Part shown: piece by piece, positions 44,381-64,000 of the stretch
How the letters are laid out: each line of letters starts with the position of its first letter
Numbering within the stretch: the stretch's first letter is position 1
NCBI GenBank assembly: GCA_002269645.1
Contig: NIVC01000227.1
Coordinates: 248,001 to 312,000 of the forward strand
Source: Macrostomum lignano
Taxonomy: Eukaryota
Reading direction: 5' to 3'
Length of the DNA stretch: 64,000 nucleotides
The notes under the pieces: generated by a model
Databases searched by the model: none
What the model saw: the letters and a program-made list of their open reading frames with translations, nothing else
What the model was told of the DNA's origin: nothing
Program-made: the position numbers and the translations under genes

Positions 44381-45229
44381 TTTGAACCAGAATCTTCCAC
44401 AAGTGCCGAGTCGATTGCAACTAGTTGCCAACAATTGACTCAACAACTAACGCTTGTTTATATTTACTTGTCTCTCCGGTTTCGACATTTTTAGGTGCGA
44501 AATTAATTTTGATTCGAACAAGTGAAACTAGGTTATTATTTAGGCCGCTTATTTAATGCGCAGAGCAAGAATTCAAGTTAGAGTTGGCTGCGTTCGCCGA
44601 AGCCAAAGATATGAGAACTCGAGAATGACCAGATTATGCTGAGCACGGCTCGGTGGGTGGTTTAGCCGCTCTCTGTGGCAGAAGAGAAACACAGAGAAGA
44701 CAGACCGAGAGATAGAAGTGGCCATAATTAACTGACGAAAGAGAATACTCTCGCCAAATAGCTGCATGGTCCAAGTACTTCACAAAACGAATGGCCCACA
44801 ATTGCAATTTCTGTTGCCTGTATTCTCATTTTCAGTTTTTTGTTTTTCTCTACGCAACCCCCACCCCATCCTACGGAGACGAGTGGAAAAAATACCCGAG
44901 GTGGAGGAGCTATAGGGTTGAGAAACAGTTTAAAACAGTGGGGCTCACACCTTCACGCCGTTATGGCAAGAATCAGGACTGCAGCTCTGCACCGAAGCGA
45001 AATTAAATATAATATATTCGGAGCGAGGAGTGGCCATTGGTCCAACTGTTTATTTCTCCTCTCTACGACGACCGAATTGCTCATTCGGTTCATTGTTGTT
45101 TTAGCATCGTGTAGGTGACGGTTAAATCCTCTTCGGACCGCCCTGCAGCTAAGACGGTTAAATCCGCAGACAATAGGGTAAAATAATTATTTTTCAAGTT
45201 ATTTGCACAAAAAAACTTGAATATACGAC

Positions 45230-45750
45230 TCGTAATCAATGATCGCTGATTGGCTGACGAGAAAGCTTCGCAATCAAATGCACACATTGAAATGGTCTTC
45301 ACCCCAACTGTTATTTCCCTTATCAGCAAGTCATCGCTGATTGGCTGACGAGAAAGCTTCGCAATCAATGCACACATTAAAATGGTCTTTACCCCAACTG
45401 TTATTTCCCTTATCAGCAAGTCATCGCTGATTGGCTGAAGAGAAAGCTTCGCAATCAATGCACACATTAAAATGGTCTTTACCCCAACTGTAATTTCCCT
45501 TATCAGCAAGTCATCGCTGATTGGCTGAAGAGAAAGCTTCGCAATCAATGCACACATTAAAATGGTCTTTACCCCAACTGTTATTTCCCTTATCAGCAAG
45601 TCATCGCTGATTGGCTGAAGAGAAAGCTTCGCAATCAATGCGCACATTAAAATGGCCTTCACCCCAACTGTTATTTCCCTTATCAGCAAGTCATCGCTGA
45701 TTGGCTGAAGAGAAAGCTTCGCAATCAATGCACACATTAAAATGGCCTAC
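45230..45750. repeat. 90-bp tandem repeat, about 5.5 copies, each with CTGATTGGCTG
   Basis: GCAATCAATG recurs at 45361, 45451 and onward (period 90). Confidence 0.95.
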
Positions 45751-47559
45751 GTAGACTCATATTGGCCAATCGTAAAAAACAAAACAGAATGAACGCAACT
45801 GTTTCTTTGGAAAATTTTAACGCCCATAGTAAGCGAATTCAACGATGACAGACAAAATGAAATTAGTGTTTAGTTAGTGCATATAAAACCAATGAGATTT
45901 GTATGCAGGCTTTTTTACTGTGTGAGTTTTTAAGAAATTTATAATATATATTTTTAACACACATAGAGGATCCGTTGCGCAAAACGACAAAAAAACATTT
46001 AAGGACTTGATTGGACTTAATAAACGCTTACGCTCTTTTACTTTTTAAATCTGCTTTGCGCTAAAACTGGACTACTAGAACATGATTTTAGTTATTTCTT
46101 TGCGTCAAAAAATGGGGAAACGACAATGTCTTTACCGACAGTTATATATAAAACTTCGGCTACAATGATTAAACGGCGAGTCGGTGAGTGAATTCGAACG
46201 CAGATCTGAACACAAATCGAGAAAACATGATGAATTCTGAGGGCAGGCGATGAAATCCCAGTGCGCTGATTTCATAGACGATAATTAGTTAAAGAAGATC
46301 AAAACAGACAAAGAGTGGGCATAAATAATAACTGAAGAAGCAAAAAACAGCTATATATGAATTCATATATATATATATGTAATAAAAGTTATGTACACAC
46401 GTGACTACTTAGAAATATATCAATAAAAAGTCGCGCCGCTACGACGGTTGGCGGTCACAGCAACCCGGTGCGATACAGACAGTCCATAATAATAATAATG
46501 TTAATAATAACAATAGTAAATCATTTTGCTAGTTGCAGGTGCACACGGGCCAAAAAAAGCGATCACCATCACCAGACGGCAGTTGGTAAGACGCAAAAAA
46601 AGCAAATTACTAAAATTGATAAGCAGAAAAAGGAAACCAAAATAGAAACCAACAAGAAGGAAAGCGGAGAGCTTTTTGTGCGACAGAAGCAGCTGATAAA
46701 AACGCATCGATAAGCTTTAACTGAATTTTTTGTTATAAAAAGCGCGGTGTGAAAATCTTTGAAACAGATGACGAGTTTTTACCTGTAAATTCATCCTGAC
46801 CACAGGTTTAAACAGACTTTTTTAAGCGCTTTATAATCTGTATTTTAAAACGCACAAACATAAGCTGCCATGTTATCAAACAACAACTACTAATTAAAAG
46901 TGCAATCAGTTATTAAGGACAACAGATCAATTTTTGTTTTAACAAAGTCTCACGATAACTGCGGGATTTCTATTCTGAAGAATCCGACCTTGGTTTTCAT
47001 TCTTCATCATTGGATAGAAATAAAAATAGAAGCAAATGTTACAAATAAAAGTTTGACAAAGACAGACAGACAGACAGATAAATGACATATATATAAATTA
47101 TTGAAAACGATCAAGTGATATGCGAAGCAGACAGAGCGTAGTGATATTGTCAGGGCGACTTAGGCTAAGAATTAAAACAAAAATTTACAAATTTGAAAAC
47201 TATTTAATAGCTGCAGGGTTGGTGTTAAATTATTTAGAAAAAATTGTCTGTGTTGGTGATAGTACTTAAAGCAATACAGTAGGTATATCAAAGTAGGTGC
47301 TTGGGTAAAGAATCTAAAATTATTACAAAGATTACTGGTCGCCTACTATCTCCAATTCAGTAGTAAGTAAAGTAAATTAGCAAAGCAGTTTTTCTGCAAG
47401 AATTATTTACCAAATTAGCGAAGTAAACCCCTAATTCTAAAAAACTAAATGACGCACTATCAGTTTTTAAGATCACGTGACAGAGGATGGTTATACGAAG
47501 TATTTGTACATATCAGTGTTCCGCTCCGGCAGGGCTTGTTGCTATTGGACAAATCATAA

Positions 47560-47925
47560 GTCACGTGACTTTTTCTGACCCAATAAAAACATAGTCACGT
47601 GACTTCCATCAGCTAATTGAAACATAGTCACGACGTGACTTCTCTGAGCCAATTAAAACATCGTCACGTAACTTCTCTGAGCCAATTTAAACACCGTCAC
47701 GTGACTTCTCTGAGCCAATTAAAGCATCGTCACGTGACTTCTCTGAGCCAATTAAAACACCGTCACGTGACTTCTCTGAGCCAATTAAAACATCGTCACG
47801 TGACTTCTCTGAGCTAATTAAAACACAGTCACGTGACTCCTCTGAGCCAATTAAAACACCGTCACGTGACTTCTCTGAGCTAATTAAAACACAGTCACGT
47901 GACTCTCCTGAGCCAATAAAGGCAC
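47560..47925. repeat. 33-bp tandem repeat carrying GTCACGTGAC and AGCCAAT motifs
   Basis: Unit GTCACGTGACTTCTCTGAGCCAATTAAAACATC, about 10 copies. Confidence 0.92.
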
Positions 47926-48144
47926 AGTTGCGTTTTTATTGGCGACTCCTAGTGGACCAGCTAATTAGCTAAAAATACGATACTACTGAACATAAAAAAG
48001 TAGTTAGATCTCATATGCGTACTATTATTATTATTATTTGTTATAACAGAATCTTCAAAGTGCGTACGCATAATCTCGGGACGGGTCTCTAAGCGAACAA
48101 TAAGAAGCACAAATCAATGAATTCCGCCTCAGTCCAGCCGGCCA

Positions 48145-51100
48145 TCACAGTGTGGTGTAAGTCAGCTGATGCTGCTGCTGTCCCATTGTCCGACTGTCCT
48201 GCACCGTGGAGGCGATGCCGGCGGACACGGAGGGCACCAGGGCGACGCTGCTGGCCACGGTGGCGCCCACAGCTCCGGCGGCAGCGGCGGCCGCCTGCAG
48301 CTGGCTGGGATCGAGCAGCAGCAGGTTGGCGAAACCCAGCTGCTGCGCCGTCAAGGCCGTTGCGGCAGCGTTGGCGCCGACGCTATTCGACGTTGACGAA
48401 ACAACCAGAGATGACGCTGCCGATGATGACGAAGAATTGTTCACCAGAGCGGCTGCCCCGGAACTGTCGACGGTGACACCGGCGGCTGCCATTGCTGCAG
48501 CGGCGTCGGCCGGTTGAAGGATCTGCAGTTGAGGCCGCAGGTAGGCAGCGGCGGCGGCGGCAGTGGAGGTGCCGGCAGCAGCGCCGCCAGCCTGATCTGC
48601 AGGGTTGGCAGCGGGCAGCTGGTAGTACAGAGTGGGCTGGTAGATCTGCCACTCGAACTGGCCGGGCTGCTGCGTCAGCAGGGCGTACTGCTGCGGCATG
48701 GCTGCGCCAGCTTGAGCAGCAGCCGGCTGACCGATGATGGCGGCTGTGGAGCCTTCGACTTTGATGCCGCCAGCCGCTGCTCGCAGTTGCTGCTGCTGCT
48801 GCTGCTGCATTGCTGCAATCTTGGCCTGGACAGCTTCTTTAGAGTCGATGGTGGAGGCTGCGGCAGCGGCGGCTGCTTCAGCTCGAGCTTTCTGCTCGGC
48901 AGCCGCGGCGGCAGCCTGGTTGAGCTGGGCCAGCTCCGCCTTGCGTTTCCTGCGCCGTTCGGCTTTGCGCACGCTCTTGGGGTCCGGCTGCGTCACGCGC
49001 ATCTCCGTGTAGTCGGTGAACACCACATCGGAGTCGTTCAGATGCGAGCTGATGCCGACAACATAGTCACGTAGTTTCTTCAGGGCGACGTAGAATGGCA
49101 GCTTGTCGGCGGCGCGGGGCAGCTGGGCGCAGCGGGCGCTGCTGGAGGGCATGACGAACACGACAATGTCTGTGCCCACCAGCGGCTCCGGCTGCTTGCC
49201 CATGTAGAAGTTCTTGTTGCCAACGAATGCCTCGTAAATGCCTGGGAAAGTTTGCGGGAATTCAATTGCGGTTGCGGCTGGGTAGCCTTGAAGCCTAGCA
49301 AGCGCGCTATGGCTGACTATGGGGGGGGGGGCGGAAAGTGCCCTATGGCTGACTATGGGGGGGCGGAGCGGAAAGTGCCCTATGGCTGACTAAGGGGGGG
49401 CGGAAAGTGCCCTATGGCTGACTAAGGGGGGGGGGCGGAAAGTGCCCTATGGCTGACTATGGGGGGGGCGGAAAGTGCCCTATGGCTGAATATGGGGGGG
49501 GCGGAAAGTCCCTATGGCTGACTAAGGGGGGGGGGCGGAAAGTGCCCTATGGCTGACTATGGGGGGGGGCGGAAAGTGCCCTATGGCTGAATATGGGGGG
49601 GGGGCGGAAAGTGCCCTATGGCTGACTATGGGGGGGGGGCGGAAAGTGCCCTATGGCTGACTAAGGGGGGGGGCGGAAAGTGCCCTATGGCTGACTAAAG
49701 GGGGCGGAAAGTGCCTTATGGCTGACTATGGGGAGGGTGGAAAGTGCCCTATGGCTGACTAAGGGGGGGGCGGAAAGTGCCCTATGGCTGACTATAGGGG
49801 GGGGGGCGGAAAGTGCCCTATGGCTGACTAAGGGGGGCGGAAAGTGCCCTATGGCTGACTAAAGGGGGGGCGGAAAGTGCCTTATGGCTGACTATGGGGG
49901 GGGGTGGAAAGTGCCCTATGGCTGACTATAGGGGGGGGGGCGGAAAGTGCCCTATGGCTGACTATGGGGGGGCGGAAAGTGCCCTATGGCTGACTATGGG
50001 GGGGGCGGAAAGTGCCCTATGGCTGACTATGGGGGGGCGGAAAGTGCCCTATGGCTGACTATGGAGGGGGGGCGGAAAGTGCCCTATGGCTGACTAAGGG
50101 GGGGCGGAAAAGGGCCCGATGGATGACTATGGGGGGGCGGAAAGTGCCCTATGGCTGACTATGGGGGGGGAAGTGCCCTCAGGTTGGTTAAACCGCGCGG
50201 AACGGGGCAGATAGAATGCTCAACAAAGGCCAGGAAAGTACATATAAAACGAGACCTACCTTTCCCATTGAACACGGCAATTTTCGGCTTGTATTTCTTT
50301 AATTTTGCCAGCAAGATTTCGGCACCTTCTTTCATCTCCTTTCTGGTCAGATCGGCGGCGCCTTTGGTGGGCCTGGTGCACACATTGGTGAAGCCTATGC
50401 CAAAATCGCAGATCCGGTGATCCTCATGGCAGGTGAGCGGCTCCGCGATGAGGCCGCTCTCGCTCAGGCAGGACCAGAAATGATTGCCAGGTCCGGCATA
50501 GTGATGACCCACGTAGGCTGAGGTCATGCTGGGATTGATGCCGATCTGTTTGATAGTGGATCGGATTTTTGGGAGTGCGCGCGTTTGTACTACTGAATAG
50601 CCAGGATACTGAGTAGTAGAGACAAAAAGGCGAGGTAAGAAATATACGGATGTGGGAGGCTGGCCCAGCAACTGAGGGTCTGGGAGGCTGGCCCCGCAAC
50701 TGAGGATTTAAGAGGCTGGCCCAGCAACTGACGGTCTGGGAGGCTGGCCTAGCAACTGAGGATCTGGGAGGCTGGCCCAGCAACTGAGGATCTGGGAGGC
50801 TGGCCCAGCAACTGAGGATCTGGGAGGCTGGCCCAGCAACTAAGGATCTGGGAGGCTGGCCCAGCAACTAAGGATCTGGGAGGCTGGCCCAGCAACTAAG
50901 GATCTGGGAGGCTGGCCCAGCAACTAAGGATCTGGGAGGCTGGCCCAGCAACTAAGGATCTGGGAGGCTGGCCCAGCAACTAAGGATCTGGGAGGCTGGC
51001 CCAGCAACTGAGGATCTGGGAGCAGGTGAGCCAAACTTACCACAACCATGTCGAGGCCGTCTGCCAAATAGTCCGGCAGGATGTTGATGCCGGGCTGCGG

Positions 51101-51296
51101 CTCGTTATTTTCATCAAAGACGATCTGTTCGCGAAATTTTTCGCAACGCGGGCAGCTGCCAGTGAGCTCGAGGTCGTGTCGCTGACGGCGGGTCAGCGCG
51201 CTGGAGAGGTTGGGGCGTGACAGGAGGTGTGGTTATAAACAAGATGCTTTATTCAAAATCAGTAGTAATGAACTACAGACAGACAGATAGACAGGC

Positions 51297-51327
<31 letters not shown>

Positions 51328-51340
51328 CAGAAAGACAGAC

Positions 51341-51399
<59 letters not shown>

Positions 51400-51412
51400 C
51401 AGAAAGACAGAC

Positions 51413-51483
<71 letters not shown>

Positions 51484-51508
51484 CAGAAAGATAGATAGAT
51501 AGATAGAC

Positions 51509-51551
<43 letters not shown>

Positions 51552-51552
51552 C

Positions 51553-51615
<63 letters not shown>

Positions 51616-51616
51616 C

Positions 51617-51655
<39 letters not shown>

Positions 51656-51656
51656 C

Positions 51657-51691
<35 letters not shown>

Positions 51692-52998
51692 CAGCTAGAT
51701 AGATACTCGTAGATGGATAGATAGGCAGATAGATAGATAGATAAAACGGCAGCTGCAGACGCAACTTACCTCTCCAAGGCCTTGCTCAGGCCGGGAATGG
51801 GCACCTGTGATGAGGTGGAGGACGAGCAGGGCTGCGAGGAGGGGCTTCCAGGGGCGCCGCCGTTGACGCCCGCCACCTGCGGCTTCCGCTCGACAGCGGA
51901 GGCCGCAGCTGAGCCGGTTTCCGTGGGTTCAATCTTTGCTTCTAGTAGAGCCACGGGTTCAGTCTTGGCGGCAGCGACGGCAGAGGCGGAGGAGTCAGCA
52001 GCCTCGCTGGCGTCTTCAATCCAGCTGGCGGCCTGTCTGGCAGCTTCGCTCTCTTCGCCGTCGGCGCCATCAAAGCCGACGGAAACTGCGGACACGTCGG
52101 CAGATTGGACTTCAGTTTTAACCTCGGCCATGACGAAATCCTGATCTGGTGTAGCGGCGGCGGCTGCGGCGTTTTGATCTGCCGATGCTTCACGCTGATC
52201 GGCTAATGATTCAGTGGCTTCTTCGCTCTGATTGGCTGGCGCAACTTCAGATGTAATAAAACTACTAGCGGATTCAATCTGATTGGCTGGCGCTTGGTCG
52301 AAAGTTTCACTCTGATTGGCCAAGACATCGTCCACAGCTTCGTCTAGATTCGGCAGTGAACTAGCGACAGCTTTGCTCTGATTGGCTGCTGCGATTTCAG
52401 TAGCTATGCTCTGATTGGCTGCTGCGATGTCAGTAGCTTCGCTCTGATTGGCTGCTGCAATGTCAGTAGCTTCGCTCTGATTGGCTGTTGCGATGTCAGT
52501 AGCTTCGCTCCGATTGGTTGCTGCAATGTCAGTTGCTTCACTCTGATTGGCTGCTGCGATGTCAGTGCTTCGAATATCTGCAAGAAAATCCAAAACCTTG
52601 ACCTGATTGGCTGCAGGACTTTCTGTAGCCTTGCTGTGATTGGCTGCTGAGATGTCGGCAGATTCGCTCTGACTGGCTTTAAGAAACTCCGCATCCTCGC
52701 TCTGATTGGCTGCAGGAATCTCGCAAGCTCCAGTTTGATTGGCTGTGTGATTATCCGTAGCCGATTCACCCTGATCTGCCGCAGCAATATCATTAGCTCC
52801 TCTCTGATTGGCTGTAGCACCAAAACCGGTATCGCCTTGATAATGCAAAACCTCATCGAAAAACTCGATGCCCTCCATGGCCTCCTCTATGTTTGGGTCA
52901 ATGTGATTGGATGGCTCCTTGCTATCCGCGGTGGCAGCGTCTGCGCTGCAGTGGTCCTGGTTGAGCCCCAGAGAGGCCTCATCCTGCCCTGAGCTCAT
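48145..52998 (-). CDS. TDG: G/T mismatch-specific thymine-DNA glycosylase with long N- and C-terminal extensions (about 923 aa, 4 coding exons)
   Basis: Exons 52998-51770, 51200-51041 (ILPDYLADGLDMVV), 50545-50260 (IGINPSMTSAYVGHHYAGPGNHFWSCL..KPKIAVFNGK) and 49241-48145 (GIYEAF..VMPSSSARCAQLPRAADK). The total of 2772 nt is in frame and the TDG/MUG motifs are intact. Confidence 0.95.
49308..50180. repeat. About 33-bp G-run minisatellite in TDG intron 3
   Basis: Unit CTATGGCTGACTATGGGGGGGGCGGAAAGTGCC with variable G-run length. Confidence 0.95.
50655..51020. repeat. 28-bp minisatellite in TDG intron 2
   Basis: Unit GGATCTGGGAGGCTGGCCCAGCAACTAA. Confidence 0.95.
51275..51745. repeat. (GATA)n/(GACA)n microsatellite in TDG intron 1
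   Basis: Direct reading. Confidence 0.97.
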
Positions 52999-53305
52999 GC
53001 TGATGAAGGGCGCACAATTAGATGCTGAAAATTGCATTGCAATTGGTCACATTTTCGGGATTGGTTTTTTATCAAGGATTAAACTTACAAAACTACATAT
53101 CGTACCTATATTAATCAATTAAAGGCAAAATTAAGACTAAATTAATTAAAATACGAGCTTTTAAAAACTGTACATCTCCACGTTGCACTTGTATTTTAAT
53201 TAAATTTTGGAACAAATTTGCATTAACAATGCATCAAACCTACTTTTAGTAGGCGAAATGCATTTTTATCGACAGATACAACTAAACAGCAAAAACGATT
53301 TTTTA

Positions 53306-54933
53306 TTATCGCTTTGGCGTTCCCGCCCCTAACAGAGACAGAAACGAAGCCATGCCACCGCCAGGCGAACTTCTGCTGCCGGAAGAAGAAACGGCGGAAG
53401 CAGACGGCGACAAATTTGCGCCAGTAGCGTACTGCCGCTGCTGCAGCAGCTTCACCCGGCAAAGGGTTTTGTTATGCTTGTTCGCTTTGCCCTGGCTTGA
53501 ACTGCCAGGCTGGCGAGAGTGGCACATTGTCGATTGTATCGGCGTCTTTGGAGTAGCCGACGCCCGCGAAGAGGGTGCAGTCGAGCCGGGCGTGCTGGAT
53601 GAACCAGCCGGTTGCCGGGTGGTGCTGCGGCGACCGCAGGTTGGGCAGACAAGACGGACCTGCGATTAAAGTTTGTGCTTCAGTATGGTAAGGAGGTTTA
53701 GACTGACTTAATAGTAGGTTGTTGCTGCACCAAAGCGAAGGATAATGTGTTACAGGGCACTTATCTAAGAGTGAGGTGTTACAGAACAATCATAATGTGT
53801 TACAGGGCACTTATCTAAGAGTGAGGTGTTACAGAACGATCATAATGTGTTACAGGGCACTTATCTAAGAGTGAGGTGTTACAGAACAATCATAATGTGT
53901 TACAGGGCACTTATCTAAGAGTGAGGTGTTACAGAACAATCATAATGTGTTACAGGGCACTTATCTAAGAGTGAGGTGTTACAGAACAATCATAATGTGT
54001 TACAGGGCACTTATCTAAGAGTGAGGTGTTACAGAACGATCATAATGTGTTACAGGGCACTTATCTAAGAGTGAGGTGTTACAGAACAATCATAATGTGT
54101 TACAGGGCCCTTATCTAAGAGTGAGGTGTTACAGAACGATCATAATGTGTTACAGGGCACTTATCTAAGAGTGAGGTGTTACAGAACAATCATAATGTGT
54201 TACAGGGCACTTATCTAAGAGTGAGGTGTTACAGAACAATCATAATGTGTTACAGGGCACTTATCTAAGAGTGAGGTGTTACAGAACAATCATAATGTGT
54301 TACAGGGCACTTATCTAAGAGTGAGGTGTTACAGAACAATCATAATGTGTTACAGGGCACTTATCTAAAAGTGAGGTGTTACAGAACGATCATAATGTGT
54401 TACAGGGCACTTATCTAAGAGTGGGATGTTACAGAAAATCAGAATGTGTTGCAGAACAATCTTACAATGGGGTATTGCAGGACGAGTAAAAGGTCTTATT
54501 ATGTTACAGGGTAATCATTTTAAAGTAAGATGTTATAGCTTTTCAAACTGGTTACAAACAGTACAGATATAACAATAGAAATATGTTTAAAATAGAAACT
54601 GACCACTTTTCTGCTAGCGAGTGCAGCCTCTGCACTCGCCGAGCTGCCTAATCGTTTGGTTAAACGCTTTCGAGTTCTACGAAGACCCCGCCTGCTAACT
54701 GTGTAGTGTTGTTGGCAGGCCTGTGGCTGCTGCCCCAAACAGCCGGGACAGACTGAATGACACAACAGCTTCTGGTTAGAGCAGAGCACACCAGATTTCT
54801 CTAGCTTCAGCTCCAGCCATTGAGCAGTCAAGTATTTAAACATTGCAGAGTTTTTGGTAAAAGCATCTGTTTGCCATAGCTTATGCAGGTATTTTAATGA
54901 CTTCTTTATGATTGAGGCTGAACTGGGATCCAT
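53306..54933 (-). CDS. C18orf21: Rpr2/Rpp21/Snm1-fold Zn-binding protein, most similar to C18orf21 (UPF0711, RNase MRP subunit RMP24); 227 aa, 2 exons
   Basis: Exon 54933-54604 (MDPSS..LKYLHKLW..VCPGCLG..LASRKV, donor GTCAGT) joins in frame to exon 53659-53306 (VRLVCPTCGRR..S/T/P-rich tail..MASFLSLL..KR*). Two CxxC motifs 49 aa apart, a basic linker and a C-terminal FLSxL motif match C18orf21 as recalled. Confidence 0.6.
53742..54450. repeat. 50-bp tandem repeat, about 14 copies, filling the C18orf21-like intron
   Basis: Unit ATAATGTGTTACAGGGCACTTATCTAAGAGTGAGGTGTTACAGAACAATC. Confidence 0.97.
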
Positions 54934-57900
54934 TTTGCTATGAAAATGTGAATAATGCATGTAAATGTTTAATGCTTGGTTGTTGTACAGTGCTAAATAT
55001 TATTGTGATTCATATTAAACTGTCATTGTGGCATCAATATCACGCTATATATATATAAGTAACTATATAGTTGTTTGAAACTATATAGTGACACATAAGT
55101 AACCAAATAAGTTTAACTTAAAAACCTATTGCCTGCATAGAGGAATATTAATGAAACTCAACAATCTTAAAAAAACACAATAAAGAATTTTTGCAGTATA
55201 AAAGTTTTCTAAATGGTAATAAATAACCTGATGGGCTAAATTGAGTTCTTAATGTAAGCACCATTTCAATCATAGTAGAGCTCCAGGTCACACATGTGCA
55301 ACCCCCCTGATTTACACCGGCCATGTGACTTACTTTTTGACCAAAAATATGACTTACCTAAGAAAGAAACCTTTAAGCAAAATTAATGCAATTCTATGTA
55401 AATGGCAACAATAACTATGACTGTCTTATTAAGGCTAAATTCATCATTATCTAATTAGTACTAATTGTTTTTGGTTGGAATTTTTTGTGGCTTACCCCTC
55501 CCTGTTTACCACAATTTATGGTAGCCAGATCTGCTAGGTTGGCCAACAGTTGCCTATTTGGTTGCTTCAGGTGCTTGATGAAATGGCTTATAATGGCAAC
55601 ATAAATGACTTTATATATGTGCTAATTGTTATTACAATGCCAATGTCATTACATAAGTTAATATAGGTGTATATACAATTAGGGCATTCTTTAGTTAAAA
55701 TCCCTAAGCAGGTCAAGTTTTATTTTATAATCCCCATTAAAAAGAGTCAAAAAAGTTCCAGTATATCAAAAAACTGAATCTAACAATTATTGTAAATTGT
55801 ACTCAATTTTCAAATCACTTCAAATCATCACTGAAATTATCTTTGAAATGTAGCATAGAAAGTTATAGAAGCATAGCTTATAGTCACTTTCATCATACAA
55901 CTATTTAAATGGTGAAATTATATATAGGTGATTGTAAGAAAAACCAAAAGAGCTTGTTGGTTTTGCACCTGATCACACTGATAGTAAAATTGTATTAGAG
56001 GGATTGTATTACAAAATCGAATGGATTAGTATGGTCCCAAATTTGCAGTTTAATTGTGTTCATTCTATGGACACAGAGTCCCAGTCCACATAAAAAAGTA
56101 ATATATCTCATCAATGATCTGCATGTTTGAGAATAAAATTATTTGTTATGGTAATTGCTTCTGCACTCTCCTCACTTTTGTACGTGTTTGTAAGACAAAA
56201 CCAAAAGAGCTATATACTTAAGTGAGATTATAATTATCTTAAATTGGCGTCAGCTACTAGATAAGACATTTGTGGGACAAACAAACATGGCCAAAAATTC
56301 ACTAGAAATCTACAATTAAAAAAGGGTACATTAAACAAATTTAAAACCATGTTTTAAGTTTAAAAAATATCCATGGCACCATTTAATACTCTTGTTTATT
56401 AATAGTTTTCTTTTTTATTGAAGCACTTCTCATTGGGACATGCAAAAATTTCATATTTTTTTATTTTTATTGAATATAACTTTTTTTCTGAGTGACTATA
56501 CTGATTCAATGGTTTTCCTAAGAATAGTAATTGTTGAAATCTTTTGTTTAAGACTAGACTCACCTATCATGTTTATTCCTTTGCAATATTATAAATTTTT
56601 ATATAATATATAAATAATTTTGGGTTAACCCAATACAATTTTATTATTAGTATGATTGTAATTCGAAACCAAAAAAGCTCCTTTGGTTTTGTCTTATAAT
56701 CACCTACAAATAATTTTACCATTTAAATGGTCATGTGGAAAAGTAAATATAAGCTACATTTTTTAACAAAACCCAAGACTTTATAATACAATACTGCGCT
56801 TTTAAGTTTTCCTATTTAAAAGTTTGGTTTTAAAAGTTTTTTTAACTTATAATTTTGCCATCTTATAAGGGGGATTGTATATTGAAAGTCCTGACTTTTA
56901 TATGGATAGTGCAACGTAGTTTTAAAACAAAAAATGCCACAAAAAGGTGAATCCATATTATTTAGTTATAAAAAAGTTTAAACTTATTATGAAGCTTTAT
57001 AGAATTTGTTACATCTGGTCCAAATGATTTACATTTTAATTTTATAAAAGAACTATAAACCATTTATAAAAATTACAAATAAATATAAGACTAGGGTACT
57101 AGTGTAATTTTATTTGCAAAATTATTTTTCTTTTGAATTTGTGCCAGTTCTGACTAATAATGCTATCATTTCAAAGTCATATACAGTCACATTAGTTGGC
57201 AATATTTTATGAAATTATTTTTCATTTGAATTCACACCAATGCCAAGGATTTAAATTAATGATTTGTATGATAAAGACATGGCAAAGAAGTCTACCTTAC
57301 AAGTTATCTATGGCCTAAACCCAAAGGCCATAGTCAGGATCATGCTATGTGTGTGCTAGAAGCCACTCCAAAAAATTTTTGGTGAGCACCAGGTATGCCA
57401 GTCAAAATGCACAAGTGTGCCAGGTGCGCTAGTCCTAAATCCTAATCCTATGTAAAAAATGTGTAATTGCAAGTAAAGATTATAAATTGAAGATGTTAAG
57501 ATTTGTTTTTAATTTCAAAAATAAAGAATAAAAAGAAGAAATAAAACACAATTTTAAGAATTTTATAAATGAAGCAAATGTTGTCAATTTTCATTACAAT
57601 ATATTTGCAAAATCATTGTTAAACTTTGTGCAAAATTTCATGCTTCATGTACTTTGATTTTGTCTTTTACAGTAGCCATGGTGCAGCCTCCTTCAAGACT
57701 AGGCCTTGAATAAGCATTGAAAAAATAAAGTTTTGGCTTTGGTGTCATATAGAAAATAAGGAATGGTGGTGCTAAAAACTTAAACATAGGTAATGGCAAC
57801 TACCTATGTTTATCTATGGAAACAGCTTATCACAATTTGATATTTAATAAAATAAAATATTATAATAGGCCTATATAGGTCTATAAATGGTCCAAATAGA

Positions 57901-58399
57901 GCAAAAGAATAGAGCATATATCAATATATGCTCCTAGCATATGTTGGTAGGTTTTAGTGAAGTATTTTATTAGGATATAAAAATTAGGTAGTATTTATCA
58001 ATATTGATTTGCTTAGAATTAGGTCTAATTCATTTATTTGTTGTTTTAGATATCAATATTTTTTTAAATTAAGGCCCCTATTTGGCATTTTTGCAGTGTA
58101 TACTTTACTCTTAGCAACATTAGATTTAGGGCCTAAGCAAAGTAGATAGTTTATTCTTAAAATTCCTAGAATCCTAAATCCCTATAATTCTTGCAATGTT
58201 CAATAAATACTTATTTCTTTAGTAAATTAATTTGGTAGGCCTAAATTAGCTTACAAATATGTATGAATACACCAAACCACATTGACATTGTATTTAGGAA
58301 TTTTCTATACATTTTTACTAATTATAAATAACACTATTATTACTGAAGTAGGCTAGACCTATGGCCTATTTCCAAAAACTGAACATGCGAAGCATGCAT

Positions 58400-59300
58400 G
58401 TTAGGATTGTTAGGCATGGTTATTTATAGAATAGAAATCAATTATGACATGTGAGGTGACGCATGATTTTTTAACAATAATAAAAAACTCTAGCCACTTA
58501 AAAAAGCGATTTACTAAGTGATATATTACTCATATGCTGCTAAATTAACTACGACTACTAAAAAAGGTGACATGTCTAACACCAGAACACATATGTTGCT
58601 AACTAACTTGCGCCTTGGACCGACCGACGAATTCTATTTCCGGGAACAAAGAATGCTTTTTAAAAAAGAGAACTCACCATCTCAACAAATAAAAAAACAT
58701 TTTTAAAAGTTATTTTTTCTTATTGAAAACAAATACTTTAGCCTGAACAAAAAAGTATATGAAATTTAAAAGTGCGCCAAGTTTTTACTACATTGGGTAT
58801 AAAAATATTTCATCTAAAAATTTGAAATGTCCAATTTCCAGGATATCCCGGCGAGGATCTATAAGTTTCAGATTGCGTTTTGATTAGTCACTTGTGTAGA
58901 TATACCAGTTTCTCTCTGGAAATAACAGGTTACGGGCGAAAAAATATATGCAATATTCGTTTAAAAAAACTTTAATTTTAGTTAGGAAGCAAAAAGTGTA
59001 TACATTGGCTGCTATTGTTATTGAGGGCATGATTTCATAATCCTTTTTTCTAACCAGGATTGGTTCCTTTCCTCGGTTCTTACTTCTTCCTTAATGCAAA
59101 GAACTGCTTTCGCGTTATTACAACTTATTTTTAGTCCACTCTAGATCCTATGGTTCTTCCTAATTCATTTTTTTAAGTTTAGTATCTTTAAATGCCTTGT
59201 TGCTTCACTGTTTTATTTAAGTATCTTTATTGACATAATGACATTGTTCGCAAGTACGTTATAGGCCTATTAATATTGCTACATTTTCTGCAAATCAGCA
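58400..59300. promoter_or_regulatory. Putative bidirectional promoter (CpG-retaining patch between divergent genes)
   Basis: CpG dinucleotides are frequent here but scarce in the AT-rich DNA on both sides; it lies between the C18orf21-like (-) and PARP4-like (+) genes. Inference only. Confidence 0.3.
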
Positions 59301-60108
59301 CCCATAGACGATTTTTTTCAATATTCAAGTTTTTAAATTGTTTTTACCTAGAGTAATATAATCACAACTATATAGTTTTTTGGGACAAACTTTGTTTAAG
59401 GGATCTTATTATATTCTTATACACTTGCAACTTTCTTATTGAGTCATTGCCATAGGCTATTAAATCATTATTTTTAACTTAAAAAAATGTCTCCCAATTT
59501 TATGAATTATTATTTACCCATATTATTAAACTATTTTTAAATATAATCAAACAATAATAGAAGAATGATCAATCATTCAAATATATTATATGTTGTCAAT
59601 AGTAAAAAATTGCTGTAAAGAATTCTTAATCATTTATTAATGGGTGCTTTATCCAAGAGAAATAAAAATAATTAGGAATTAAATAACTACCTCACTTTTA
59701 AATAATGCCTTGCATTTTAGACAATATGACTTAAGTGAAAAGTTAGGTAAAATCAAAAAAACATAAATAATATATTTTTTTGGCTGGATTATCTATATAA
59801 CTTATAATAACTGTGTATGTTGAATAATTTTTACAATGACTTTCAATGTTGTTGATAATAAATGTTGAGTATATTTGAAATAATCTGAATATAATACCAA
59901 TATAGAAGAACAAGTAGAGGACTAATTTGGAATTCCTTGCTAGCTATGTAACAATTTTGCTTTAAGCCAAGTATGCCAAGCTGCAACCCCCATGCAACTA
60001 AGTAACTTAATAGCATTAATAATTAACAAATATAATTAGTTGGCCTATAATATTATAAGCTCATAGCAAGTGTCCAAAATATTTGCATGCAAATGTTATT
60101 CCACAACC

Positions 60109-63100
60109 ATGCCTGAATTGCATCCAGTTTTCCAATTTCTGGCTCCTACAACAACCCAAAGCCATGACACTTTTAAGTCTAATCAGGCCACAGAGCTGCA
60201 GGTGTCTTCAATTAGAAAGGATGCTTCAAAACCAAAGCCAGTGATTGGCGCTGACAACAACTCAACAAAGCTAGTTATGTCTGCCTTGTCAAAATGCCAG
60301 CCACAAATGCAGTCAAGTAAGATATTATTAATATTACTTACAATTTTGCAACCACGCAACACTAAAGCATTGGCTGTTTTGTAGGATTGGCTAAAAATAT
60401 CCCAAACTGTTGGGCCCTAAATCTCTCTTTAGAATAGTCTGGTTTATTATGAAATTTAAAATTTCCTAGTATATATGCATTGCCATCTCTGCTTCCATCA
60501 ACAGCAAAGTTGCACTCGCTGACCAAGCCAAGCATTAGTTCTGCTGCAAAGCCTCTTCCTCTATCGCTGGTGAGAGAATTATTTTCAGTTACCTTTATTT
60601 GGATATCTATCCAATGAGAATGCTCAAATTAACTATTAGCCTCTTAATCTTGTTCCCAACACTCAAGAATATTGGCGTGCCCAGCTCAGTCTCAGGTGAG
60701 GCTACTGCTTCAACTGCTCAGGCTCCACCTTTGCAAGCGTCTGGTCCACTGAATAGCCTTCAATTCGCGCTATTGTTGGACAGCGGCGTTCGGCCCAAAG
60801 ACAAGCAGAATTATCGACGATTAATCATGACCAATGGCGGCATTGTGTCCTGCATTGTCACTAGGAAGGTAATTCGCTGTGGTATTATAATATGGAATGT
60901 TTCAGACAGTGTAAACTAGGCAGTGCGCTGATTGGCTGGCTGAGATCAGATAAGGCTCAGCCAGTGTACACCAAGCAGTGCACTCATTGGCTGGCTGAGA
61001 TTAGATAAGGCTCAGCCAGTGTACACCAGGCAGTGCACTCATTGGCTGGCTGAGATTAGATAAGGCTCAGCCAGTGTACACCAGGCAGTGCACTCATTGG
61101 CTGGCTGAGATTAGATAAGTCTCAGCCAGTGTACACCAAGCCGTGCGCTGATTGGCTGGCTGATATTAGATAAGGCTCAGCCAGTGTACACCAAGCAGTG
61201 CACTGATTGGCTGGCTGATATTAGATAAGGTTCAGACAGTGTACACCAAGCAGTGCGCTGATTGGCTGGCTAATATTAGATAAGGCTCAGCCAGTGTACA
61301 CAAGACAGTGCGCTGATTGGCTGGCAGGGTTGGGAATCAAAGTGCTGAACAGATTTTCCCTGCCTTCTACTCACCAGATTGACTACCTACTGGTATCCGA
61401 CGGTGTCGACCTGCAGTGCTCAAAAGTTCGACAGGCGCTCAGCCTTGGCAAGCCCGTGGTTCGAATCGGATTTCTCGACGCCTGCTTAGCCGCTGGTCGT
61501 CCGATTGGAACTGACGAATTCCTGGCGGCTGGAAAATCGGCCAGCGAACTGTTTGAGAAAGGAGCCGTTAGGGGTGAGTCACCAGAAGCAATTTTGTCTA
61601 GGGAGAACTCGTCTTTTGGTTATAGACTATTTTTGATTTGAGATTTCAAATGTAATACTGAATGATTCATATCATTTAGGCTTCAGAGGTTCCTTATCGG
61701 AGTTGATTTTTTAAATTAAAAACTTCCCCTTGGCGACAATATTATAAACGTTCCTTTTGGGGACACTTCTATAAAACGGCCCCTTTGGTGACACTTTCAT
61801 AGAACGGCCCTCTTGGACACACGTTTATAAAAACGGCACTTAGGGATCAATTTTTGGATACAGTTAAAATAAAGGAAACTTGCCGTGTCTTTTTCTAAAC
61901 ACTTTTTTCAAATTTCGCAATGGAAGCCTATTTTAATATTCTATCAGTGCCCGAGAAATCGGACACGCCGTCATTTCGAGTTCAAAACGTTAGCAACTTT
62001 CCGGAGGCGAGTAAGATATCACCGCCAACAGATCGATTCGAGCTGCTGCGGTACGCCATTTTTGTCAAGGTCAGCAGAGATTTGTTAGAAGCTCTACCTT
62101 GCTCTGTGAACTACTATAATATTTATGAATTGAATTTCATTATTTCAGAATGCGACTTACAGCCTGTTGGAGCTGTACACGGGCGAAATAGATGGACAGA
62201 ATCAGTACATTGTCTATGCTAGCAAGGGAAGCGAGGTAGGTATCGATTGGTTCTTTTAGTTATTAATTTTTCTAAAAGTACACATGTACTTTCTATGTGC
62301 GTTTGTACTTTTAAGCTAAAATGTACTTAGAATAATTTAGGGCGCACGTGTATTTTAGTTCGAACATTAAGCTTGAAGTACATTTGTACTTTTGCTGTAC
62401 TGGATCCTAATTAATTACTATTATAGTTACTATTTTGATTATTATCATATCTCGCAGGTCTTTGTTCCCGTGTCCATGCGGGTGATACCGGACGCTCCCA
62501 ACGCGCTGAATGTGCTGGCTCATCTGTCCGATTCGTACGGTAGCGGCGGCAGTCTGGGGCCGACGACTTCAGCTCCTGCTTCGACTAAATGGTGTCCTCT
62601 GAGTCGCGTCCGAGACTTGCCAGTTTCGCTGTTCCGATCCTGCTCGAACCAGCTTAGAGAGGTTAGTTAGCGTATGGGAAGAAGCTTGGGCGTGGGAAGC
62701 CACGATGTGGTGCGGTGGGACTTCTGTATGAAGATTATGTAGCGTGTGGGGAGATCTCAGTGTGTGTGGGAGACCTCAGCGTGTGGGAAGACTGCAACGG
62801 GTGGGGAGACTGCAGCGTGTGGGAAGACTGCAGCGTGTGGGAAGACTGCAACGGGTGGGGAGACTGCAGCGTGTGGGGAGACCTCAGCGTGTGGGGAGAC
62901 TGCAGCGGGTGGGAAGACTCCAACGGGTGGGGAGACTGCAACGGGTGGGGAGACTGCAACATGTGGGAAGACTGCAGCATGTAGTGTGTGAAATGCGGAC
63001 AGATGCCAGTGTGTGGAGAGAGCAGCGTGTGGGAAGACTGCAACGAGTGGGGAGACTGCAGCGTGTGGGAAGACTGCAACGGGTGGGGAGACTGCAGCGT

Positions 63101-63606
63101 GTGGGAAGACTGCAGCGTGTGGGAAGACTGCAACGGGTGGGGAGACTGCAGCGTGTGGGAAGACTGCAGCATGTAGTGTGTGAAATGCGGACAGATGCCA
63201 GTGTGTGGAGAGAGCAGCGTGTGGGAAGACTGAAACGAGTGGGGAGACTGCAGCGTGTGGGAAGACTGCAACGGGTGGGAAGACTGCAACATGTGGGAAG
63301 ACTGCAACATGTTGAAGACTGCAACATGTAGTGTGTGAAATGCGGACAGATGCCAGTGCGTGGAGAGAGCAGTGAGACATCAGTGAGGCAAAAACTCCTC
63401 ACAATACCCGATCCCATACCGGCCAACACTCGCAGGCGCTGACTCAAGTTGCTCCCAGCCTGTTGAACTCCGGCGAAGACCAGTTCGTTGAGGCCTGCTG
63501 GCAGGAGGCTCTGGAATTCCTGGGCCAAGCCTCTCAAAGCATTGGCGCGGGTGGCAACGGTTGGCTGGGCCACCTGATGCAGAGCCGGAGCTGCACCATT
63601 GACGAT
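60109..63606 (+). CDS. PARP4: PARP4/vault-PARP-like protein, 5' part (low-complexity N-terminus, BRCT, WGR-like region, start of regulatory domain); 3'-partial
   Basis: In-frame exons 60109-60316, 60505-60569, 60668-60868 (LQFALLLDSGVRPKDKQNYRRLIMTNGGIVSCIVTRK), 61378-61573 (IDYLLV..ALSLGKPVVRIGFLDACL, BRCT), 61948-62069, 62149-62235, 62458-62661 and 63436-63606 (FVEACWQEALEFL). The BRCT style resembles invertebrate PARP4; the catalytic domain is not in the window. Confidence 0.65.
60915..61325. repeat. 55-bp tandem repeat with ATTGGCTGGCTGA, intronic
   Basis: CCAGTGTACA recurs at 60961, 61016 and onward. Confidence 0.93.
62745..63350. repeat. 18-bp minisatellite (GTGTGGGAAGACTGCAGC) with higher-order blocks of about 180-200 bp
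   Basis: Direct reading; a GTAGTGTGTGAAATGCGGACAGATGCCAG spacer recurs three times. Confidence 0.92.
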
Positions 63607-63689
63607 GTAAGCAAAGTTTTTTGTGTACTTTTTAAATAAATCTGTATATTATTTGTGTGGGCTTAGTACGCTTGCGTGCATTAGACCAA

Positions 63690-64000
63690 GTACTGCAGAG
63701 GGTTGCACGCTTTAATTAAGTGTTGGAGAGGGTTGCACGCTTTAATTAAGTGTTGGAGAGGGTTGCACGCTTTAGTAGTTAAATACTGGAGAGGGCTGCA
63801 CGCTTTAGTTAAATACTTGGAGAGGATTGCACGCTTTAGTTTAATACTTGGAGAGGGTTGTACGCTTTAGTTTAATACTTGGAGAGGATTGCACGCTTTA
63901 GTTTAATACTTGGAGAGGGTTTCACGCTTTAGTTAAATACTTGGAGAGGGTTGCACGCTTTAGTTTAATACTTGGAGAGGGTTGCACGCTTTAGTTAAAT
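63690..64000. repeat. About 30-bp minisatellite (GGAGAGGGTTGCACGCTTTAGTTAAATACTT)
   Basis: Direct reading; runs off the window. Confidence 0.92.

What the first reader, a model, noticed from the sequence alone, without database searches (positions are those of the whole stretch)
53024..54940. Candidate trans-spliced operon: C18orf21/RMP24-like gene then TDG
Seen: the two genes are on the same strand with only about 280 bp of AT-rich DNA between the upstream stop (53306, overlapping AATAAA) and a clean acceptor (ttttcAG, 53025) lying 26 nt before the TDG ATG. No upstream TDG exon or promoter-like sequence fits in the gap, and the upstream gene also has an acceptor 4 nt before its ATG. Established: flatworms resolve polycistronic pre-mRNAs by SL trans-splicing. 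Inference: an rRNA-processing factor and a base-excision/demethylation enzyme are co-transcribed, as might suit proliferating cells.
Basis: partly seen in the sequence, partly recalled or inferred. Interest (0 to 1): 0.7.

Follow-up and report, generated by a model that had tools for sequence, protein, structure and literature searches.

The report
Already-annotated two-gene flatworm operon
Two neighbouring genes of the flatworm Macrostomum lignano, a small zinc-ribbon protein and the DNA-repair enzyme TDG, are most likely made from one transcript that spliced-leader trans-splicing cuts apart; this is common in the species and the public annotation of this contig already implies it.

Summary
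The sequence observation is correct at every coordinate. The window is 100% identical to Macrostomum lignano contig NIVC01000227.1 (assembly Mlig_3_7). On the minus strand a 227-aa gene ends at TAA 53308-53306, overlapping AATAAA. A 281-nt gap (28% GC) follows. TTTCAG (AG 53026-53025) then lies 26 nt before the ATG (52998) of a 923-aa TDG.

The operon reading is supported indirectly. GenBank names the genes BOX15_Mlig014568g4 and g5. By the authors' naming scheme, I infer that a shared prefix means one transcriptional unit cut at trans-splice and poly(A) sites. The annotated 5'-partial coding regions start within 0-2 nt of the predicted acceptors in five of six cases. In paralogous copies the acceptor is overwritten by the spliced leader's 3' end (…TTGCATG). 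I read this as a scar of polishing with RNA-seq reads, which puts leader-bearing reads at those junctions. The pair meets the published operon criteria; about 15% of genes in this species are in operons.

TDG identity is solid. The 'C18orf21/RMP24-like' label is unproven: the motif architecture fits, but no search reaches significance. The suggested link to proliferating cells was not tested. The finding is ordinary and already annotated.

The parts
54938..54946 (-). Trans-splice acceptor of the upstream gene (TTTTCATAG; AG at 54939-54938). The mRNA body starts at 54937.
   Evidence: Sequence. The annotated 5'-partial CDS of PAA87513.1 starts at 54936, 1 nt inside. Copy L001 reads TTTTGCATG here, which equals the last 7 nt of the SL.
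53306..54937 (-). Upstream gene (BOX15_Mlig014568g4, 227 aa from ATG 54933). Exon 1 is 54937-54604, the intron is 54603-53660, exon 2 is 53659-53306 and the stop TAA is 53308-53306. It is a split zinc-ribbon protein and a possible RMP24/Snm1-type factor.
   Evidence: Gene model. Identical to P0127/PAA87513.1. Motifs CPGC 62-65, CPTC 115-118 and FLSLL 216-220.
53302..53307 (-). AATAAA poly(A) signal overlapping the stop codon of the upstream gene.
   Evidence: The cleavage site itself was not observed.
53025..53305 (-). Intercistronic region and outron of TDG: 281 nt, 28% GC. It holds one GTAAGT at 53088-53083 and in-frame ATGs at 53052 and 53037 that trans-splicing removes.
   Evidence: No Rfam family matches.
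53025..53030 (-). Trans-splice acceptor of TDG (TTTCAG). It matches the published M. lignano trans-acceptor motif [T/C]TNCAG.
   Evidence: motif from PMC8629364. In paralog copies the AG is replaced by TG (L001) or CATG (L002), the SL 3' end.
48145..53024 (-). TDG gene (BOX15_Mlig014568g5, 923 aa from ATG 52998). Coding exons are 52998-51770, 51200-51041, 50545-50260 and 49241-48145 (stop TGA 48147-48145).
   Evidence: Gene model. The same exon structure reproduces the 930-aa GenBank protein of copy L001 exactly. Pfam UDG 5e-17. Human TDG 1wyw 4.5e-58, with the GINP motif kept.
47935..47940 (-). AATAAA about 205 nt after the TDG stop; the likely 3' end of the operon.
   Evidence: No further annotated gene down to window position 43306.
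54938..60089 (.). AT-rich (28% GC) 5.15-kb region with no annotated gene, between the upstream gene and a divergent PARP/VIT/VWA-like gene on the + strand. This is where the operon's promoter must lie.
   Evidence: The promoter position was not determined.

Best explanation
This is a two-gene operon of Macrostomum lignano that is resolved by spliced-leader trans-splicing. Transcription starts somewhere in the 5-kb AT-rich region upstream of 54938 and runs through both genes. The upstream mRNA receives the 35-nt SL at 54937 and is cleaved and polyadenylated shortly after AATAAA (53307-53302). The downstream TDG mRNA is released and capped when the SL is added at the TTTCAG acceptor, so its body starts at 53024.

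Shown: the anatomy, the identity with the annotated contig, and the annotated 5' ends.
For: 1. The window is 100% identical to NIVC01000227.1. Its genes are BOX15_Mlig014568g4 and g5; the copy on NIVC01001381.1 carries g1 and g2. According to Wudarski 2017 (PMC5730564), the prefix names a cluster of transcriptional units, and TBONE cuts those units into genes only at experimentally mapped SL and poly(A) sites. Two unrelated proteins sharing a prefix therefore come from one assembled pre-mRNA.
2. The annotated coding regions are 5'-partial, meaning open to the transcript end. They start 1 nt (upstream gene, all three copies) or 2 nt (TDG in L001 and L002) inside the predicted junctions. A transcript that began upstream, or that used the GTAAGT donor, would contain an in-frame ATG (53037) or an in-frame TAG, and would not be called 5'-partial.
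3. Mlig_3_7 was Pilon-polished with RNA-seq reads. Exactly at the junctions, paralog copies read TTGCATG, CATG or TG, the SL 3' end, in place of the AG acceptor. The same holds at the neighbouring PARP-like gene.
4. The pair meets the published operon criteria: same strand, adjacent, the downstream gene trans-spliced (inferred here from points 2 and 3), and spacing below 1 kb. The acceptor matches [T/C]TNCAG (PMC8629364).
Against: I could not view any SL-containing read, poly(A) read, RAMPAGE signal or RNA-seq coverage across the gap. All support is second-hand, from the annotation and the scars.

In this very contig the annotated TDG CDS starts at 53010, which is 14 nt inside the exon and not after an AG. 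I cannot explain this.

The spacing is longer than the roughly 100-nt mode for M. lignano operons. The AT-rich gap could hold an internal promoter. The acceptor motif alone is at chance frequency. My reading of the locus-tag prefix follows the methods text and is not an explicit statement by the authors.
Confidence: 0.78

Rival explanations
1. The genes are two separate transcription units. TDG has its own promoter inside the 281-nt gap and makes a short outron that is removed by SL trans-splicing. The genes are merely close together, or the locus is a 'hybrid' operon with an internal promoter.
For: The gap is AT-rich (28% GC) with TATA-like stretches. In M. lignano about 60% of trans-spliced genes are not in operons (PMC8629364). 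The spacing is above the 100-nt mode.
Against: The shared transcriptional-unit prefix in two copies implies that assembled RNA spans the gap. Distances below 1 kb belong to the operon mode of the published bimodal distribution. No TSS evidence is available either way.
Confidence: 0.15
2. TDG has a short non-coding first exon in the gap that is cis-spliced from the GTAAGT donor (53088) to the CAG acceptor (53025). There is no trans-splicing at this site.
For: A perfect GTAAGT lies 64 nt upstream of the acceptor and is kept in all copies.
Against: Such an mRNA would carry an in-frame TAG (53095-53093) upstream of the ATG, and its ORF would be called complete. All three GenBank TDG coding regions are instead 5'-partial and start at or after the acceptor. 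The SL-like scars sit exactly at this junction.
Confidence: 0.04
3. The two reading frames belong to one gene: a read-through, cis-spliced fusion, as in the older UniProt model P0130.
For: A 727-aa database protein joins the end of the upstream ORF to the TDG start.
Against: That model uses a wrong frame for part of exon 2 and drops parts of the TDG catalytic domain, so it looks like an ab initio artefact. A stop codon with an overlapping AATAAA ends the upstream ORF. The evidence-based annotation keeps two genes.
Confidence: 0.02

Closest known systems
SL trans-spliced operons of Macrostomum lignano (Wudarski et al. 2017; Ustyantsev & Berezikov 2021)
   Same: Same species and same contig. The genes are adjacent on one strand. 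The downstream acceptor TTTCAG fits [T/C]TNCAG. The spacing is below 1 kb. It is a two-gene operon, as 75% of them are. Both genes appear trans-spliced.
   Different: Nothing of substance differs. The spacing (281 nt from stop to acceptor) is longer than the roughly 100-nt mode, and the upstream gene's acceptor is a TAG rather than a CAG.
Caenorhabditis elegans operons
   Same: A polycistronic pre-mRNA is resolved by 3'-end formation of the upstream gene coupled to SL addition at the downstream gene. Operons are small and hold functionally unrelated genes.
   Different: C. elegans uses a dedicated SL2 for downstream genes and has intercistronic regions of about 100 nt. M. lignano uses one 35-nt SL that ends in AUG for all positions (PMC8629364).
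Human C18orf21/RMP24 (PDB 9uh7 chain K) and yeast Snm1, the RNase MRP-specific subunits
   Same: The upstream protein has N-terminal helices, CPxC and CxTC knuckles separated by a long basic insertion, a disordered Ser/Thr/Pro-rich tail and a C-terminal FLSxL. The order matches vertebrate RMP24.
   Different: There is no significant sequence similarity, no usable structure model and no functional data. No homologue was found outside M. lignano.
Animal thymine DNA glycosylase (TDG, UDG family 2)
   Same: The catalytic domain is 68-74% identical to those of other flatworm TDGs. It matches human TDG at E 4.5e-58, with the GINP, HHY-PGNHFW and MPSSSARCAQ motifs kept.
   Different: At 923 aa it is about twice the usual length. 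It has a roughly 400-aa acidic N-terminal extension containing an 11-aa repeat (AANQSEATDIA) and an Ala/Gln-rich C-terminal tail.

Membership tests
M. lignano SL operon (operational definition of PMC8629364) | Immediately adjacent genes with the same orientation and no opposite-strand gene between them | tested here: met
   Both genes are on the minus strand. No gene is called between them in any of the three GenBank copies.
M. lignano SL operon (operational definition of PMC8629364) | The downstream gene is SL trans-spliced | tested here: met
   Met indirectly. The 5'-partial GenBank CDS starts 2 nt inside the acceptor in L001 and L002. SL 3'-end scars (TG, CATG) replace the AG at the junction. 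SL reads themselves were not seen, and in this contig the annotated start is 14 nt further in.
M. lignano SL operon (operational definition of PMC8629364) | Repeat-adjusted intergenic distance below 1 kb | tested here: met
   281 nt from stop to acceptor, with no tandem repeat in the gap.
M. lignano SL operon (operational definition of PMC8629364) | Trans-acceptor motif [T/C]TNCAG at the junction | tested here: met
   TTTCAG at 53030-53025. The upstream gene's acceptor (CATAG) does not fit the motif. The paper found the motif at only 44% of sites.
M. lignano SL operon (operational definition of PMC8629364) | One pre-mRNA spans both genes and there is no internal TSS | tested here: inconclusive
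   The shared transcriptional-unit prefix Mlig014568 (g1+g2, g4+g5) implies an assembled spanning transcript. TSS data are not available with these tools.
TDG/MUG (UDG superfamily, family 2) | UDG-fold catalytic domain with TDG-level similarity | tested here: met
   Pfam PF03167 at 5.3e-17, above the cut-off. Human TDG structures match at E 4.5e-58. Flatworm TDGs are 68-74% identical.
TDG/MUG (UDG superfamily, family 2) | Catalytic Asn in the G-I-N-P motif | tested here: met
   VIGINPS aligns with human IIGINPG.
RMP24 / C18orf21 (UPF0711, PF15719) | Match to the family profile | tested here: not met
   No Pfam hit at E<=1. A profile of 13 vertebrate members scores 3.3 bits; 1.6% of full shuffles and 14% of block shuffles score as high or higher.
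RMP24 / C18orf21 (UPF0711, PF15719) | Pairwise or profile-profile similarity to human RMP24 | tested here: inconclusive
   BLASTP E 0.014 across the two zinc knuckles. hhalign E 0.002 with probability 14%, over the same region.
RMP24 / C18orf21 (UPF0711, PF15719) | Split zinc finger (two CxxC knuckles) with a large basic insertion between them, which RPP21 lacks | tested here: met
   CPGC 62-65 and CPTC 115-118, separated by 49 residues rich in Arg and Lys. The feature is as described in PMC13184271. This is motif level only.
RMP24 / C18orf21 (UPF0711, PF15719) | Conserved C-terminal FLSSL motif (invariant F, L, S, L in the vertebrate alignment) | tested here: met
   FLSLL at 216-220 of 227 residues. 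The motif appears in the last 25 residues of 0.05% of shuffles. This was a post hoc test.
RMP24 / C18orf21 (UPF0711, PF15719) | Snm1/RPP21-like three-dimensional fold | tested here: inconclusive
   The single-sequence AlphaFold2 model has mean pLDDT 46.5, too poor for a fold search. No alignment depth is available.
RMP24 / C18orf21 (UPF0711, PF15719) | Association with RNase MRP RNA and a role in ITS1 cleavage | not testable with these tools
   Needs biochemistry.

The most novel reading that the evidence does not exclude
The upstream 227-aa protein may be the highly diverged flatworm orthologue of the RNase MRP subunit RMP24/Snm1, which would be the first recognised in Platyhelminthes. In addition, SL addition may set TDG translation. 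The SL's terminal AUG opens a 10-codon uORF (MHLIVRPSSA) whose UGA overlaps the TDG AUG as AUGA. TDG output would then depend on leaky scanning or on termination-reinitiation. Neither idea is excluded by my evidence.
Probability: 0.2. Interest if true: 0.3.

Novelty: already known. Interest (0 to 1): 0.12.

Why it matters
It matters little beyond bookkeeping. About 10,000 M. lignano genes lie in such operons, and this pair is already split out of one transcriptional unit in GenBank.

Two by-products may be useful. First, the upstream gene is a candidate flatworm RMP24/Snm1 that sequence searches cannot see. Second, the Mlig_3_7 reference carries SL-derived 'scars' that overwrite real acceptor AGs. 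These scars can mislead splice-motif analyses, but they also mark trans-splice sites.

Tried and rejected
The clusters of both proteins hold only GenBank and UniProt entries and no RNA-seq assemblies.
- Text and supplements: full-text and supplement searches for Mlig014568 and Mlig004890 found nothing.
- Identity of the upstream gene:
  - Pfam gave no hit and PDB by sequence gave none.
  - The 5.8-billion-protein search found only M. lignano.
  - The 1.84-billion-representative phmmer search found only the protein itself, a fused gene model and two repetitive, spurious proteins.
  - The single-sequence AF2 model was unusable, so no fold search was run.
  - I did not fold it with vertebrate RMP24 sequences as the alignment, because that would be circular.
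- Synteny: Clonorchis sinensis and Schistosoma bovis TDG loci have no annotated gene within 10 kb upstream. tblastn with the M. lignano protein or with human RMP24 found nothing.
- Non-coding RNA: no Rfam family matches in 44000-64000, and there is no SL RNA gene in the window. The gap folds only slightly better than shuffles (z = -2.0).
- Paralogue comparison as a conservation test: rejected, because the copies are 95-100% identical everywhere.
- The bacterial promoter and terminator scanner was not used, because it is irrelevant to a eukaryote.
Full report
**Source and anatomy**

The upstream protein's only database relative is a Macrostomum lignano hypothetical protein. The window from 64000 down to 44000 is 100% identical over 20,001 nt to GenBank contig NIVC01000227.1 of assembly GCA_002269645.1 (Mlig_3_7). 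Two further copies of the locus exist, on NIVC01001381.1 (L001) and NIVC01004524.1 (L002). They are 95-99% identical throughout, introns and spacers included. For that reason they say nothing about selective constraint.

Both genes lie on the minus strand.

- Upstream gene. Exon 1 is 54937-54604 with ATG at 54933. A 944-nt intron follows, filled by a 50-bp tandem repeat of about 14 copies. Exon 2 is 53659-53306 and ends in TAA 53308-53306, which overlaps AATAAA at 53307-53302. The product is 227 aa.
- Gap. It is 281 nt long (53305-53025) with 28% GC.
- TDG. TTTCAG lies at 53030-53025, the exon starts at 53024 and the ATG is at 52998. Four coding exons (52998-51770, 51200-51041, 50545-50260, 49241-48145) give 923 aa. 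The same exon structure applied to L001 reproduces the 930-aa GenBank protein PAA68615.1 residue for residue, which validates the model.

**Is the signal more than chance?**

From sequence alone it is not. The published trans-acceptor motif [T/C]TNCAG occurs once in the gap, and one occurrence is expected from its frequency in the window. The gap also contains a perfect GTAAGT at 53088-53083 and AT-rich TATA-like stretches. The statement that nothing else fits in the gap is therefore too strong. The case has to rest on outside evidence.

**Outside evidence for SL trans-splicing and one transcript**

1. Shared transcriptional-unit name.
   - GenBank names the two genes of this contig BOX15_Mlig014568g4 (PAA87513.1) and BOX15_Mlig014568g5 (PAA87512.1). 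In L001 they are g1 and g2.
   - The authors describe assembling 'transcriptional units' and giving clusters of units that are at least 95% identical a common prefix. Their TBONE pipeline then cut each unit into genes only where SL-containing reads and poly(A) reads had been mapped (PMC5730564).
   - Two unrelated proteins can share a prefix only if they were cut from the same unit. This is my inference from the methods text.
2. Annotated 5' ends.
   - All the GenBank coding regions are 5'-partial, meaning the reading frame is open to the first base of the transcript.
   - They begin 1 nt inside the predicted junction for the upstream gene in all three copies (K+MDPSS…). They begin 2 nt inside for TDG in L001 and L002 (SNCAP…+M).
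   - A TDG transcript starting further upstream would contain the in-frame ATG at 53037, after a TGA at 53049-53047. One using the GTAAGT donor would contain an in-frame TAG. In either case the ORF would have been called complete.
   - One exception remains unexplained. In this contig the TDG CDS starts at 53010 (PFIS+M), which is 14 nt inside the exon and not after an AG.
3. SL-like scars in the assembly.
   - The assembly was polished with Pilon using RNA-seq reads as well as DNA reads.
   - The SL is CGGTCTCTTACTGCGAAGACTCAATTTATTGCATG (PMC8629364).
   - At the upstream-gene junction, the window, L002 and L003 read TTTTCATAG|CAAAATG. L001 reads TTTTGCATG|CAAAATG, in which TTGCATG is the last 7 nt of the SL.
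   - At the TDG junction, the window and L003 read TTTTCAG|CATCT. L001 reads TTTTCTG| and L002 reads TTTCATG|.
   - At the divergent PARP/VIT/VWA-like gene, the annotated start at 60091 is preceded in all four copies by TTGCATG|C, with no AG.
   - A 7-nt match at a pre-specified position has probability of about 6e-5. I read these as places where SL-bearing RNA reads overwrote the acceptor during polishing. That in turn means such reads end exactly at these junctions.
4. Published operon criteria. [quoted passage not shown] Of those operons, 75% have two genes. The modal spacing is about 100 bp and the cut-off is 1 kb (PMC8629364). This pair meets every criterion, the trans-splicing of TDG being inferred from points 2 and 3.

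**Mechanism**

The most likely mechanism is as follows. A promoter lies in the 5.15-kb region of 28% GC between 54938 and the divergent gene at 60090. No gene is annotated in that region. One pre-mRNA is made from it. The SL is added at 54937. The upstream mRNA is cleaved and polyadenylated after AATAAA. The SL is then added at 53024, which frees and caps the TDG mRNA. No further gene is annotated downstream to window position 43306, so this is a two-gene operon. I put this at about 0.78.

The main rival is an internal promoter in the gap (0.15). A cis-spliced leader exon (0.04) and a fusion gene (0.02) both conflict with the annotation.

**Gene identities**

TDG is secure. Pfam UDG matches at 5e-17. 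Other flatworm TDGs are 68-74% identical. Human TDG structures match at E 4.5e-58, with the catalytic GINP asparagine aligned. M. lignano is reported to retain DNMT1 and DNMT3 (PMC9246332), so a demethylation role is not excluded. It was not tested here.

The upstream protein is a different matter.

- It has no Pfam hit.
- It has no homologue outside M. lignano among 5.8 billion proteins or among 1.84 billion cluster representatives.
- I confirmed the human C18orf21 sequence against PDB 9uh7 chain K. BLASTP between the two proteins gives E 0.014 across the two zinc knuckles.
- hhalign against 13 vertebrate members gives E 0.002 but only 14% probability.
- A profile-HMM score of 3.3 bits is reached by 1.6% of full shuffles and 14% of block shuffles.
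- The single-sequence AlphaFold2 model is unusable, with pLDDT 46.5.

On the other hand, the architecture is collinear with the family. It has N-terminal helices, then CPGC at 62-65, a 49-residue basic insertion and CPTC at 115-118. A disordered S/T/P-rich tail and FLSLL at 216-220 follow, which compares with the invariant FLSSL. The literature says this family is conserved in structure rather than in sequence, and that the long insertion distinguishes it from RPP21 (PMC13184271). The verdict is plausible but unproven.

**Synteny**

No gene is annotated within 10 kb upstream of TDG in Clonorchis sinensis or Schistosoma bovis. tblastn found nothing there. The pairing therefore does not look ancient, or else it cannot be detected.

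**Verdict**

The operon reading is supported, though only at second hand. It is ordinary for this species, and the naming in the public annotation of this same contig already implies it. The functional story is speculation.

Noticed in passing
window 60083-60090 (+); L001 9994-10000 and 11461-11462; L002 about 11961-11964: 'SL scars'. Exactly at annotated trans-splice junctions, the Mlig_3_7 assembly reads like the 3' end of the spliced leader (TTGCATG, CATG or TG) instead of an AG acceptor. At the PARP-like gene this is so in all four copies. The assembly was polished with RNA-seq reads, so these are probably polishing artefacts. They could also help explain why the published acceptor motif was found at only 44% of sites.
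   Followed up: partly
window 37622-37634 (-): AATcTATTGCATG matches the SL 3' end at 12 of 13 positions. It follows a (GACT)n repeat and is followed 7 nt later by an ATG opening an ORF of about 90 codons. This may be another scarred trans-splice site. About 0.08 such matches are expected in the window. A weaker 8-nt case lies at 33413 (-).
   Followed up: partly
window 53024-52995 (-): After SL addition, the SL's terminal AUG opens a 10-codon uORF (MHLIVRPSSA). Its UGA overlaps the TDG start codon as AUGA. The only variable site in this leader among the copies (53007: T, A or G) is the third base of the uORF's proline codon. For the upstream gene, the SL AUG opens a 19-codon out-of-frame uORF that starts 4 nt before the main AUG.
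   Followed up: partly
window 53010 (-): In this contig the GenBank TDG CDS (PAA87512.1, 927 aa, 'PFISM…') starts 14 nt inside the exon, after GTGCG and not after an AG. The two other copies start 2 nt after the acceptor. This is unexplained.
   Followed up: no
window 53742-54454, 51277-51743, 50648-51022, 49300-50170: Every intron of the two genes is largely filled by a tandem array: 50 bp x14, (AGAT) x117, 28 bp x13, and a 33-bp G-run unit x26. Copy numbers differ between the paralogous loci; for example, the upstream gene spans 1182, 1631 and 1681 bp in the three copies.
   Followed up: no
window 52998-51770 and 48900-48145 (-): This TDG is about twice the usual size. It has a roughly 400-aa acidic N-terminal extension that includes a 33-bp coding repeat (52369-52572, AANQSEATDIA) and an Ala/Gln/Ser-rich C-terminal tail. 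A second, shorter M. lignano TDG (P0002, 386 aa, 79% identical in the catalytic domain) exists elsewhere in the genome.
   Followed up: no
window about 53333 to 53000 (-); protein P0130: A 727-aa database protein fuses the end of the upstream ORF to TDG through an invented intron across the gap. It also uses a wrong frame in exon 2. This shows how ab initio gene prediction can merge operon genes.
   Followed up: partly
window 60090-64000 (+): A large divergent gene (more than 2,400 aa; BRCT, PARP, VIT, VWA, ubiquitin and HSP70 Pfam hits in the GenBank product) starts 5.15 kb from the operon and also appears to be SL trans-spliced. The two share an AT-rich upstream region with no annotated gene.
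   Followed up: no
window 47560-47917 and 45242-45748 (-): Downstream of TDG lie a 33-bp tandem repeat carrying CACGTG (E-box-like) cores and a roughly 90-bp repeat carrying CCAAT-like 'CAGCCAATCAGCG' units. Their function is unknown.
   Followed up: no
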